A stretch of DNA of 64,000 nucleotides, taken from positions 372,001 to 436,000 of the forward strand of contig NIVC01000667.1 of the NCBI GenBank assembly GCA_002269645.1. Direction: 5' to 3'. Below, one piece after another: positions 39,701 through 45,691 of this stretch. Below the pieces are notes generated by a model that had not been told where the DNA came from, made no database searches, and was given only the letters and a program-made list of their open reading frames with translations. The stretch's first letter is position 1. Each line of letters begins with the position of its first letter. The DNA is from Macrostomum lignano. Lineage: Eukaryota. Made by a program: the position numbers and the translations under genes.

Positions 39701-42700
39701 CTGTCTGTCTGTCTGTCTGTCTGTCTGTCTGTCTGTCTGTCTGTCTGTCTGTCTGTCTGTCTGTCTGTCTGTCTGTCTGTCTGTCTGTCTGTCTGTCTGT
39801 TTTTCTGTCTGTCTGTCTGTCTGTTTGTCTGTCTGTCTGTCTGTCTGTCTGTCTGTCTATCTGTCTGTCTGTCTGTCTGTCTGTCTGTCTGTCTGTCTAT
39901 CTGTCTGTCTGTCTGTCTGTCTGTCTGTCTGTCTATCTGTCTGTCTGTCTGTCTGTCTGTCTGTCTGTCTGTCTGTCTGTCTGTCTGTCTGTCTGTCTGT
40001 CTGTCTGTCTGTCTGTCCGTCTGTCTGTCTGTCTGTCTTTCTGTCTGTCTGTCTGTCTGTCTGTCTGTCTGTCTTAGTGTCTGTCTGTCTGTCTGTCTGT
40101 CTGTCTGTCTTAGTGTCTGTCTGTCTGTCTGTCTGTCTGTCTGTCTGTCTGTCTGTCTGTCTTAGTGTCTGTCTGTCTGTCTGTCTGTCTTAGTGTCTGT
40201 CTGTCTGTCTGTCTGTCTGTCTGTCTGTCTGTCTGTCTGTCTGTCTGTCTGTCTGTCTGTCTGTCTGTCTGTCTGTCTGTCTGTCTGTCTGTCTGTCTGT
40301 CTGTCTGCCTGTCTGTCTGTCTGTCTGCCTGTCTGTCTGTCTGGTCTGTCTGTCTGTCTGTCTGCCTGTCTGTCTGTCTGTCTGTCTGTCTGTCTGTCTG
40401 TCTGTCTGTCTGTCTGTCTGTCTGTCTGTCTGTCTGTCTGTCTGTCTGTCTGTCTGTCTTAGTGTCTGTCTGTCTGTCTGTCTGTCTGTCTGTCTGTCTG
40501 TCTGTCTGTCTGTCTGTCTGTCTGTCTGTCTGTCTGTCTGTCTGTCTGTCTGGTCTGTCTGTCTGTCTGTCTGTCTGTCTGTCTGTCTGTCTGTCTGTCT
40601 GTCTGTCTGTCTGTCTGTCTGTCTGTCTGTCTGTCTGTCTTAGTGTCTGTCTGTCTGTCTGTCTGTCTTAGTGTCTGTCTGTCTGTCTGTCTGTCTGTCT
40701 GTCTGTCTGTCTGTCTGTCTGTCTGTCTGTCTGTCTGTCTGTCTGTCTGTCTGTCTGTCTGTCTGTCTGTCTGTCTGTCTGTCTGTCTGTCTGTCTGTCT
40801 GTCTGTCTGTCTGTCTGTCTGTCTTTCTGTCTGTCTGTCTGTCTGTCTGTCTGTCTGTCTGTCTGTCTGTCTGTCTGTCTGTCTGTCTGTCTGTCTGTCT
40901 GTCTGTCTGTCTGTCTGTCTATCTGTTTGCCTGTCTGTCTGTCTGTCTGCCTGTCTGCCTGTCTGTCTGTCTGTCTGTCTGTCTGTCTGTCTTAGTGTCT
41001 GTCTGTCTGTCTGTCTGTCTGTCTGTCTGTCTGTCTGTCTGTCTGTCTTAGTGTCTGTCTGTCTGTCTGTCTGTCTTAGTGTCTGTCTGTCTGTCTGTCT
41101 GTCTGCCTGTCTGTCTGTCTGGTCTGTCTGTCTGTCTGTCTGTCTGTCTGTCTGTCTGTCTGTCTGTCTGTCTGTCTGTCTGTCTGTCTGTCTGTCTGTC
41201 TGTCTGTCTGTCTGTGTGTCTGTCTGTCTGTCTGTCTGTCTGCCTGTCTGTCTGTCTGTCTGCCTGTCTGTCTGTCTGGTCTGTCTGTCTGTCTGTCTGT
41301 CTGTCTGTCTGTCTGTCTGTCTGTCTGTCTTTCTGTCTGTCTGTCTGTCTGTCTGTCTGTCTGTCTGTCTGTCTGTCTGTCTGTCTGTCTGTCTGTCTGT
41401 CTGTCTGTCTGTCTGTCTGTCTGTCTGTCTGCCTGTCTGCCTGTCTGCCTGTCTGTCTGTCTGTCTGTCTGTCTGTCTGTCTGTCTGCCTGTCTGCCTGT
41501 CTGTCTGTCTGTCTGTCTGTCTGTCTGTCTGTCTTAGTGTCTGTCTGTCTGTCTGTCTGTCTTAGTGTCTGTCTGTCTGTCTGTCTGTCTGCCTGTCTGT
41601 CTGTCTGGTCTGTCTGTCTGTCTGTCTGCCTGTCTGTCTGTCTGTCTGTCTGTCTGTCTGTCTGTCTGTCTGTCTGTCTGTCTGTCTGTCTGTCTTAGTG
41701 TCTGTCTGTCTGTCTGTCTGTCTTAGTGTCTGTCTGTCTGTCTGTCTGTCTGTCTGTCTGTCTGTCTGTCTGTCTGTCTGTCTGTCTGTCTGTCTGTCTG
41801 TCTGTCTGTCTGTCTGTCTGTCTGTCTGTCTGTCTGTCTGTCTGTCTGCCTGTCTGTCTGTCTGTCTGCCTGTCTGTCTGTCTGGTCTGTCTGTCTGTCT
41901 GTCTGCCTGTCTGTCTGTCTGTCTGTCTGTCTGTCTGTCTGTCTGTCTGTCTGTCTGTCTGTCTGTCTGTCTGTCTGTCTGTCTGTCTGTCTGTCTGTCT
42001 GTCTGTCTGTCTGTCTGTCTGTCTGTCTGTCTGTCTGTCTGTCTGTCTGTCTGTCTGTCTGTCTGTCTGTCTGTCTGTCTTTCGGTGTGTTGCGTCTTTT
42101 CGTGTCTGTCCGTCTTTTATTTGTCGCTGATTGCGGGATCGATCCTACCAACCGAAAGTACATCTCCTGCACCAGTTTTTAGTTCACCTTATGGACCGGA
42201 AGAAATTGATTTGTTCGCTGGCAAAACAATTTTCCTAAAAGCGAAATAGCTTTTCTTTAGATTAAAAAGCAGCTTGGCTAGATTAAATTGAGAATAAATC
42301 CACCCACTGGTAAAAATATTTTCAATTTATCTGTGTCCATAAATTTTTTAAATAATATTTTCCTAACGCTTTTAACAGAAACCCATCGGTTTGACAGCAG
42401 GGACTCAAGTTGAGCTTTGAAAGCTTTCTGTCGAATCATTCTTATTACAGAAACTGCAGTTTTGCCTAAATACGCTCGTATTTGTTATGACGGAAGTATG
42501 CGGGTTAATAGAGAAGGGGGTTGGAGAGGTGAGAGATGCAGCTGAAGGGAGAGAGGGAGAGGCAAGATGGGGATGAGATGAGGGGTGAGATACCACTCAC
42601 ACCATCTCACCTGTTGCAGAGCACACCGGATGCCACCTACCAGAAGATGCACCAGCAGATGGAAGTGTGGAACACCTAGGGGTGTTCGGGTCGGCCATTT

Positions 42701-45691: not shown

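What the first reader, a model, noticed from the sequence alone, without database searches (positions are those of the whole stretch)
42665..43963. hAT-like transposon inside a glutamate-receptor exon creates its own splice acceptor: candidate intron birth
Seen: removing the element and one TSD restores ...[27 protein letters not shown]. Unspliced, the element's first bases (TAG, 42677) are an in-frame stop. Its terminal TA plus the first TSD base make CCCCTAG|G (43955-43956) behind a C-rich tract like other acceptors in this locus. An exonic GT at 42667, two bases before the left TSD, is in the matching phase. A 1290-nt GT-AG intron (42667-43956) would give an in-frame mRNA lacking only the Trp (MEVNTSGEQ). 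A second option (GAA|GT at 42665 to CAG| at ~43975) deletes 8 aa. Established: introner-type DNA transposons generate introns by combining a TE-end splice site with a co-opted host site. Inference: this may be such an event in a metazoan neuronal gene; any insertion of this family into a target starting with G would gain an AG. The donor (GT|GTGGAA) is weak.
Basis: partly seen in the sequence, partly recalled or inferred. Interest (0 to 1): 0.85.

Follow-up and report, generated by a model that had tools for sequence, protein, structure and literature searches.

The report
Transposon interrupting a flatworm glutamate-receptor exon
A 1.3-kb non-coding hAT-type DNA transposon sits inside a coding exon of a Macrostomum lignano glutamate-receptor gene and puts a stop codon in frame; this is most likely an ordinary gene-breaking insertion, and nothing found here shows it is spliced out as a new intron.

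Summary
The element spans 42677-43955 (1,279 bp). It has perfect 14-nt terminal inverted repeats (TAGGGGTGTTCGGG) and a perfect 8-bp target duplication (GGAACACC). Removing it with one duplication restores an ionotropic glutamate receptor exon, and its first three bases are an in-frame TAG. The host is Macrostomum lignano.

The "intron birth" reading is not supported.
- The preferred donor (42667, AGT|GTGGAA) matches the donor consensus only at the GT. That is the lowest score among all 4,145 GTs in the window.
- The alternative donor (42665) matches 4 of 9 positions, no better than 59% of GTs.
- The three real donors of this gene are all GTRAG.
- The candidate acceptors lack the branch-point motif and the T-rich tract that all three real acceptors have.
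- The terminal-repeat stem is predicted to pair the TE-end AG (P unpaired 0.001).
- In a simulation, 44% of insertions of this element into this gene's exons gave an in-frame GT..AG pair, and 9.8% gave one using the TA+G acceptor.

No RNA, empty allele or second copy of the element could be reached. M. lignano carries three homeologous subgenomes, so a broken copy is tolerable. Verdict: ordinary insertion allele; splicing is neither shown nor excluded.

The parts
38105..38496 (+). iGluR exon A (start of the S1 ligand-binding lobe). It has a 1-nt frame break at about 38243-38248, between ...YPPFVMYRT and [17 protein letters not shown].... It ends at donor AGG|GTGAGG (GT at 38497).
   Evidence: Pfam Lig_chan-Glu_bd
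39187..39684 (+). iGluR exon B (end of S1, then M1-M2-M3 including SYTANLAAF). Acceptor CACAG|G; donor CTG|GTGAGC (GT at 39685).
42620..42676 (+). 5' part of iGluR exon C ([19 protein letters not shown]), after acceptor TTGCAG|A
42665..42668 (+). The only two exonic GT dinucleotides upstream of the element. These are the candidate cryptic donors GAA|GTGTGG (42665) and AGT|GTGGAA (42667).
   Evidence: 4/9 and 2/9 matches to CAG|GTAAGT
42669..42676 (+). Left copy of the target-site duplication GGAACACC
42677..43955 (.). Non-autonomous hAT-like DNA transposon, 1,279 bp, no ORF, AT-rich core. AATAAA occurs at 42865 and 43192 on the gene's strand.
42677..42679 (+). In-frame TAG stop codon formed by the first three bases of the element
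42677..42690 (+). Left terminal inverted repeat TAGGGGTGTTCGGG
42691..42840 (.). Left subterminal GC-rich repeats (TTCGGGG / CCCGAACCCC units, internally hairpin-forming)
   Evidence: (D1, D2, I2, I4, I6)
43789..43941 (.). Right subterminal CCCGAACCCCGAA-type repeats
   Evidence: (D1, D2)
43942..43955 (-). Right terminal inverted repeat (CCCGAACACCCCTA on the + strand)
43956..43963 (+). Right copy of the target-site duplication GGAACACC. Its first G, together with the element's last A, makes the candidate acceptor AG at 43955-43956.
43964..44147 (+). 3' part of iGluR exon C ([16 protein letters not shown]...GFAVVQG), ending at donor GCA|GTAAGG (GT at 44148). It contains the candidate cryptic acceptors AG 43971-72, 43974-75 and 43995-96.
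44720..44994 (+). iGluR exon D (end of S2 and M4), after acceptor AAACAG|A

Best explanation
A non-autonomous DNA transposon of hAT type inserted by cut-and-paste into the exon that encodes a variable loop of the S2 ligand-binding lobe. The exon lies between the M3 and M4 membrane segments of a kainate/AMPA-like ionotropic glutamate receptor gene of Macrostomum lignano. The insertion duplicated 8 bp of target.

Shown: the element's first three bases are an in-frame TAG. The unspliced message therefore encodes a receptor truncated before half of S2 and before M4.

Inferred: such a message would be a target for nonsense-mediated decay, because real introns lie downstream. It could also be polyadenylated early at the two AATAAA signals inside the element. 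This gene copy is most likely a null or strongly reduced allele. It is tolerated because M. lignano carries three homeologous subgenomes. It is not an established or nascent intron. The in-frame GT...AG combinations are the sort that turn up by chance around many exonic insertions.
For: Structure of the insertion:
- Perfect TIRs and TSD, and exact restoration of the iGluR reading frame.
- iGluR identity: Pfam Lig_chan 1.3e-41 and Lig_chan-Glu_bd 1.4e-29. Best homologue is M. lignano A0A1I8H0G1, with no substitutions outside frame-shifted stretches.

Donor side:
- The gene's three real donors are GTGAG, GTGAG and GTAAG.
- The candidates are GTGGAA (2/9 consensus matches, the minimum among 4,145 GTs in the window) and GTGTGG (4/9; 59% of GTs do as well).

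Acceptor side:
- The real acceptors each have a yTnAy motif 17-43 nt upstream and 7-9 T in the last 30 nt.
- All candidates have no such motif and 1-5 T.
- In the predicted fold of 42600-44020, bases 42675-42694 pair with 43936-43957. The acceptor AG 43955-56 is unpaired with probability 0.001.

Chance level: 44% of 2,166 simulated insertions of this element into exons A-D give at least one in-frame, stop-free GT..AG pair. 9.8% give one using TA+G.

Other points:
- AATAAA at 42865 and 43192 on the sense strand.
- Redundancy: three homeologous subgenomes with 1.1% CDS divergence (PMC10733133).
Against: No RNA data were available, so splicing was never observed to be absent.
- Apart from one frame break that may be an assembly error, the flanking exons are fully open. 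The gene therefore does not look long dead.
- The element plus TSD is a multiple of 3.
- Option 1 would remove only one residue, in a loop where this protein is 2-3 aa longer than eight homologues. A spliced product could plausibly work.
- A 1.3-kb intron is of typical size for this species: mean 1.1-1.4 kb (PMC5730564).
- The pyrimidine content of the TE-end acceptor (0.65) is in the top 11% of AGs in the window.
- Maize Ds elements, also hAT, are known to be spliced from exons through weak sites. This is known to me only from the titles cited in PMC3260210 and PMC3443670.
Confidence: 0.75

Rival explanations
1. Proto-intron. Part or all of the pre-mRNA loses the element by spliceosomal use of a cryptic exonic donor (42665 or 42667) and an acceptor at or just after the element's end (43956, 43972 or 43975). 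This gives an in-frame receptor mRNA lacking 1-8 residues of a variable loop. It would be intron gain by transposon insertion, as in introners or maize Ds alleles.
For: - Three in-frame, stop-free donor/acceptor pairs exist.
- The deleted residues lie in a non-conserved loop that is longer here than in homologues.
- The TIR stem would bring donor and acceptor to within about 10 nt of each other.
- Intron length is typical for the species.
- Transposon-derived introns that take one splice site from the TSD or the host are established in other eukaryotes (PMC11282704; PMC9860276; PMC3443670).
Against: - Donors are at or near the bottom of the range for random GTs.
- No branch-point motif or U-rich tract.
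- The AG is sequestered in a 16-20 bp GC-rich stem.
- The arrangement is expected by chance in 10-44% of insertions.
- Splicing would not restore the original mRNA exactly, unlike true introners.
- No transcript evidence and no family evidence.
- Introners are rare in animals: two taxonomic groups in a survey that included 835 animal and land-plant genomes.
Confidence: 0.13
2. The gene copy was already a pseudogene when the element landed, because the frameshift at about 38243-38248 is real. The insertion is then a neutral event in dead DNA.
For: - A 1-nt frame break lies between two blocks that both align to iGluR homologues.
- Three long aminopeptidase ORFs in the same window (about 7.3 kb in all) are unbroken, so the assembly is not riddled with indels.
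- The neopolyploid genome has redundant copies.
Against: - The UniProt model of what appears to be the same locus in an older assembly reads YRTEDNDG in frame. An assembly deletion in the window is therefore at least as likely.
- About 420 codons of exons A-D hold no stop codons or other breaks.
Confidence: 0.1
3. Assembly artefact. The element is not really in this exon; a repeat was misjoined during assembly.
For: M. lignano assemblies are known to be difficult, with many repeats and three subgenomes. Indel differences exist between two assemblies of this locus.
Against: A perfect 8-bp duplication of unique exon sequence on both sides of perfect TIRs is the signature of real transposition, not of a misjoin.
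Confidence: 0.02

Closest known systems
Non-autonomous hAT-superfamily DNA transposons (Ds-like or large MITE-like elements)
   Same: 8-bp target-site duplication. Short perfect TIRs (14 nt, within the 10-25 bp range given in PMC3942097). The terminus TAGGG fits the YARNG start typical of hAT ends (my own knowledge). Reiterated GC-rich subterminal motifs, an AT-rich non-coding core, no transposase.
   Different: No autonomous partner or other copy was seen, so the family assignment rests on structure only. The TSD GGAACACC fits neither the Ac-type (nTnnnnAn) nor the Buster-type (nnnTAnnn) target consensus (my own knowledge). At 1.3 kb it is longer than classical MITEs.
[quoted passage not shown] 1994)
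   Same: A hAT-type non-autonomous element in a coding exon. The idea is that cryptic sites in or next to the element ends let the spliceosome remove most or all of it, giving partly functional in-frame mRNA.
   Different: In maize the splicing was demonstrated on RNA; here it is only a possibility read from the DNA. Those papers were not held in the library. I know them only from the titles cited in PMC3260210 and PMC3443670 and from memory.
Introners (Micromonas, Aureococcus, dinoflagellates, fungi, some tunicates and other aquatic eukaryotes)
   Same: DNA-transposon-like elements with TIRs and TSDs. One splice site comes from the element and the other from the TSD or host (PMC11282704; PMC9860276).
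   Different: Introners are defined as multi-copy families that make up many introns, with RNA-confirmed splicing that usually restores the host ORF. Here there is one copy, no RNA, a donor supplied only by a chance host GT, and a 3-24 nt loss of coding sequence.
Ordinary insertional null alleles caused by transposons in exons
   Same: In-frame stop at the element boundary, polyadenylation signals inside the element, redundancy of the host gene in a polyploid genome.
   Different: Nothing found here sets it apart from this class.

Membership tests
hAT superfamily (non-autonomous member) | 8-bp target-site duplication | tested here: met
   GGAACACC at 42669-76 and 43956-63, 8/8 identical. Criterion from PMC3942097.
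hAT superfamily (non-autonomous member) | Short terminal inverted repeats (10-25 bp) starting YARNG | tested here: met
   14-nt perfect TIR TAGGGGTGTTCGGG. The length range is from PMC3942097. The YARNG rule is from my own knowledge.
hAT superfamily (non-autonomous member) | Mobilised by a hAT transposase (BED finger, DDE/RNase-H fold, hAT dimerisation domain) of a related autonomous element with the same ends | not testable with these tools
   There is no ORF in the element and no other copy in the window. No Macrostomum genome is in the searchable collections.
hAT superfamily (non-autonomous member) | Target-site consensus nTnnnnAn (Ac group) or nnnTAnnn (Buster group) | tested here: not met
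   GGAACACC fits neither. These are statistical preferences over many insertions, so one site is weak evidence. The consensus sequences are from my own knowledge.
Introner / transposon-derived intron | The element is removed from the mRNA by the spliceosome (RNA evidence) | not testable with these tools
   No transcript of this gene was found. The only near-identical protein among 5.8 billion is the UniProt gene model P0001. Look-ups of window ORFs found nothing.
Introner / transposon-derived intron | Multi-copy family whose members form introns in many unrelated genes | not testable with these tools
   Single copy in 64 kb. The metagenome scan gave only chance 18-mer hits.
Introner / transposon-derived intron | Element plus TSD provide competent splice sites, so that splicing restores the host reading frame | tested here: inconclusive
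   In-frame pairs exist. However, the donor is a bare host GT (2/9 or 4/9 consensus matches). The acceptor lacks a branch motif and U tract and is predicted to be paired. Splicing would delete 3-24 nt rather than restore the ORF. Chance level is 10-44%.
Ionotropic glutamate receptor (host gene) | S1/S2 ligand-binding lobes and a pore-forming ligand-gated channel domain with the SYTANLAAF motif | tested here: met
   Pfam PF10613 1.4e-29, PF00060 1.3e-41, PF00497 2.9e-12 on the restored protein. SYTANLAAF is in exon B. 295 homologues with E<=1e-20.
Ionotropic glutamate receptor (host gene) | Amino-terminal domain (ANF_receptor) upstream | tested here: inconclusive
   Only a weak tblastn hit at 33279-33389 (E 0.006). 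No Pfam hit on upstream ORF fragments.

The most novel reading that the evidence does not exclude
The element is in fact spliced out of a useful share of transcripts, through the exonic GT at 42665 or 42667 and an AG at or just past its end. The TIR stem might help by looping the element out. That would make this a transposon-to-intron conversion caught at birth in a bilaterian neuronal gene. If other copies of the family behave the same way, it would be a hAT-derived introner family in a flatworm.
Probability: 0.07. Interest if true: 0.7.

Novelty: new member of a known kind. Interest (0 to 1): 0.2.

Why it matters
If it were a real nascent intron, it would be a rare animal example of intron gain by DNA-transposon insertion. 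It would sit in a laboratory model with transgenesis and abundant RNA-seq, so the early steps of intron birth could be tested directly. As the evidence stands, it is an ordinary insertion allele.

Its practical value is modest:
- It marks a probably inactive copy of an iGluR gene in a neopolyploid genome.
- It defines the ends of a hAT-like element that may still be mobile in M. lignano.
- It shows that the UniProt model A0A1I8H0G1 for this locus is distorted by frame-repairing pseudo-introns.

Tried and rejected
1. Looking for transcripts, empty alleles or homeologous copies through the protein collection.
- The full query found only the UniProt model P0001 as a near-identical hit.
- A focused 113-aa query around the site returned nothing, not even P0001. 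That search is uninformative.
- Exact look-ups of P0001 and of the window ORF ending at the element's TAG found no contigs.

2. Using P0001 as evidence for the element or for splicing: rejected.
- Its MEV|ALSECVGG junction equals donor 42667 -> acceptor 43996. That is out of frame in the window and needs an extra G that the older assembly evidently had.
- Because element plus TSD is 3 x 429 nt, the same junction fits a 43-nt pseudo-intron in an empty site as well as a 1,330-nt intron in a filled site.
- The same model has another pseudo-intron of about 45 nt at roughly 38290-38334 (inferred).

3. Family survey.
- There is no second copy or fragment in the window.
- The metagenome scan with an 18-mer of the terminus gave 16 single hits. 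None had an inverted partner and none had clustered CCCGAACCC-type repeats (0-1 per locus), so they are chance hits.

4. Testing for further gene lesions in the amino-terminal domain: the exons could not be recognised.

5. U1-duplex energies are not register-constrained, so I relied on consensus matches instead.

6. The maize Ds splicing papers (PMC45394, PMC361803, PMC336558) are not held.

7. A literature search for 'hAT' in Macrostomum papers matched mostly 'hatchling' and gave nothing on this family. No paper links introners with Macrostomum.
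Full report
**What is in the sequence**

The window holds one ionotropic glutamate receptor (iGluR) gene on the + strand. 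tblastn with 120 homologues places its recognisable exons at 38105-38496 (A), 39187-39684 (B), 42620-42676 plus 43964-44147 (C) and 44720-44994 (D). The restored protein matches Pfam Lig_chan-Glu_bd (1.4e-29), Lig_chan (1.3e-41) and SBP_bac_3 (2.9e-12).

The best homologue is UniProt A0A1I8H0G1 of Macrostomum lignano. It is identical wherever it is not frame-shifted. The window is therefore M. lignano, and that entry is a gene model of what is probably the same locus in an older assembly.

**The element**

Exon C is interrupted at 42677-43955 by a 1,279-bp element.
- Its 14-nt terminal inverted repeats (TAGGGGTGTTCGGG) are perfect. They are the only two matches in the window (0.29 expected at up to 2 mismatches).
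- It is flanked by a perfect 8-bp direct repeat, GGAACACC.
- About 150 nt at each end consist of CCCGAACCCCGAA-type repeats at 60-65% GC.
- The core is 26-35% GC and has no ORF and no similarity to anything else in the window.
- An 8-bp TSD and 10-25-bp TIRs are the structural hallmarks of hAT elements (PMC3942097). The TAGGG terminus fits the usual YARNG start (my own knowledge).

No transposase or second copy is available, so the assignment is structural only.

Every item checks out.
- The TAG at 42677-79 is in frame.
- Removing the element plus one TSD gives ...[27 protein letters not shown].
- Intron 42667-43956 (1,290 nt) gives MEVNTSGEQ.
- Intron 42665-43975 gives MEVYIPLEQ.

I found one more in-frame pair, 42665->43972. 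I also found three in-frame routes that skip the 57-nt half-exon, using the genuine donor at 39685 with acceptors 43972, 43975 or 43996; these delete 22-30 aa. Skipping the whole of exon C is out of frame.

**Is the splice-site arrangement more than chance?**

I simulated insertion of this element, in both orientations and with an 8-bp TSD, at every position of exons A-D (2,166 insertions). I asked for a GT within 15 nt upstream and an AG from the element's end to 20 nt past the TSD, giving an in-frame, stop-free product.
- 44% of insertions had at least one such pair.
- 9.8% had one using the element's terminal TA plus a G-initial TSD.

The arrangement is therefore unremarkable.

**Quality of the sites: donors**

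The three homology-verified donors of this gene are AGG|GTGAGG, CTG|GTGAGC and GCA|GTAAGG. All are GTRAG.
That is 2/9, the minimum, so every one of the 4,145 GTs in the window does at least as well.
- The other donor, GAA|GTGTGG, matches 4/9, and 59% of GTs do as well.

**Quality of the sites: acceptors**

Each real acceptor has a yTnAy motif 17-43 nt upstream and 7-9 T in the last 30 nt. The four candidate acceptors have no such motif and 1-5 T. The tract before the TE-end AG is C-rich (Y = 0.65, top 11% of AGs in the window) but contains a single T.

In the predicted fold of 42600-44020, the two termini pair (42675-42694 with 43936-43957). This places the AG at 43955-56 inside the stem, with probability of being unpaired 0.001. 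A thermodynamic fold of a 1.4-kb RNA is only indicative. Such a stem could equally be argued to bring the two splice sites together.

**State of the rest of the gene**

Exons A-D are open for about 420 codons, except for one 1-nt frame break between YPPFVMYRT and [17 protein letters not shown] (about 38243-38248). Both sides align to iGluR homologues.

The UniProt model reads YRTEDNDG in frame and otherwise has no substitutions in about 310 aligned residues. It comes from an assembly that evidently carries other single-base insertions, which break the frame in three places. The frame break in the window may therefore be an assembly error, and I do not count it as proof of a pseudogene.

The same model's junction MEV|ALSECVGG corresponds to 42667->43996. 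It is not evidence for splicing or for the presence of the element. It is out of frame in the window. The model also contains another frame-repairing pseudo-intron of about 45 nt. And because element plus TSD is 3 x 429 nt, the junction fits an empty site as well as a filled one.

**Position in the protein**

The insertion lies in a variable loop of the S2 lobe, after the conserved YxxMxxxM helix. Here the protein is 2-3 residues longer than eight homologues. Loss of the single Trp would probably be tolerated. Loss of 7-8 residues is less certain.

**Context from the literature**

- M. lignano has three homeologous subgenomes with 1.1% CDS divergence (PMC10733133), so a broken copy can persist.
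- Mean intron length is 1.1-1.4 kb (PMC5730564).
- Intron gain by transposon insertion is an established mechanism elsewhere, including use of TSD-derived or latent host sites (PMC3443670; PMC11282704).
- Introners occur in 5.2% of surveyed genomes, but in only two animal groups (PMC9860276).
- No paper links introners with Macrostomum.
- Maize Ds, also a hAT element, is the classical case of a transposon spliced from exons. I know this only from the titles cited, because the papers themselves are not held.

**What could not be done**

No Macrostomum genomic or transcript sequence could be reached. The metagenome scan for the terminus returned only chance hits.

**Verdict**

The element is a hAT-like non-autonomous transposon in an iGluR coding exon.

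The most likely consequence is a null or strongly reduced allele: an in-frame stop, probable nonsense-mediated decay or early polyadenylation, and buffering by homeologues. I hold this at about 0.75.

I put the chance that a useful fraction of transcripts is rescued by cryptic splicing at roughly 0.1. I put the full novel case at about 0.07: a useful share of transcripts spliced, caught at intron birth, possibly as part of an introner-like family. Interest as it stands is low (0.2). It would rise to about 0.7 if RNA data showed efficient in-frame removal.

Noticed in passing
window 42669-42678, 43875-43884, 43945-43963: The target duplication GGAACACC shares the 7-mer GAACACC with the element's own terminus (CCGAACACCCCTA). 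The 10-mer GGAACACCTA (target plus the first two element bases) recurs inside the right subterminal repeats. Only 0.2% of window 8-mers and 0.65% of exon 8-mers share a 7-mer with the terminal 20 nt. This could be coincidence, a target preference for end-like sequence, or a trace of an earlier insertion or excision at this site.
   Followed up: partly
window 42659-42676 / alignment A1: Exactly at the insertion point the receptor is 2-3 residues longer (around EVW) than eight homologues from flatworms, arthropods and human. An in-frame excision footprint of an earlier transposon visit is conceivable but untested.
   Followed up: no
window 38243-38248: A 1-nt frame break lies in iGluR exon A between YPPFVMYRT and EDNDG. 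It is in frame in UniProt A0A1I8H0G1, which comes from an older assembly. It is either an assembly indel or a real lesion.
   Followed up: partly
UniProt A0A1I8H0G1 (P0001) versus window 38250-38340 and 42667-44127: The public gene model for this locus is distorted. It has stretches translated out of frame ([45 protein letters not shown]), pseudo-introns that repair single-base errors, and no M4 exon.
   Followed up: yes
window 39690-42250, 44170-44670, 45000-45460, 35055-36818, 7090-7905, 16000-21500, 48040-50900: The introns and intergenic DNA are filled with long micro- and minisatellite arrays. For example, about 2.5 kb of (CTGT)n lies in the intron just upstream of the interrupted exon. 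This fits the simple-repeat-rich genome described for M. lignano.
   Followed up: no
window 2473-4977, 11659-13923, 24619-27114 (- strand): Three tandem, nearly identical, long open reading frames (835, 755 and 832 codons). The first (2473-4977), the only one scanned, encodes an M1-family aminopeptidase: Peptidase_M1 3.5e-69, plus ERAP1_C and Peptidase_M1_N. This is a local gene amplification.
   Followed up: partly
window 51012-52181 (+): An uninterrupted ORF of about 390 codons with a rhodopsin-family 7TM domain (PF00001, 1.6e-22). It lies downstream of the iGluR gene and probably continues beyond a repeat-filled intron at about 52180.
   Followed up: partly
window 38583-38619 and 39104-39135: The intron between exons A and B contains two copies of a roughly 30-nt sequence (TTCAAGCTATATTTAGCTGCGGAA...) about 520 nt apart. 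This may be the ends of another small repeat element.
   Followed up: no
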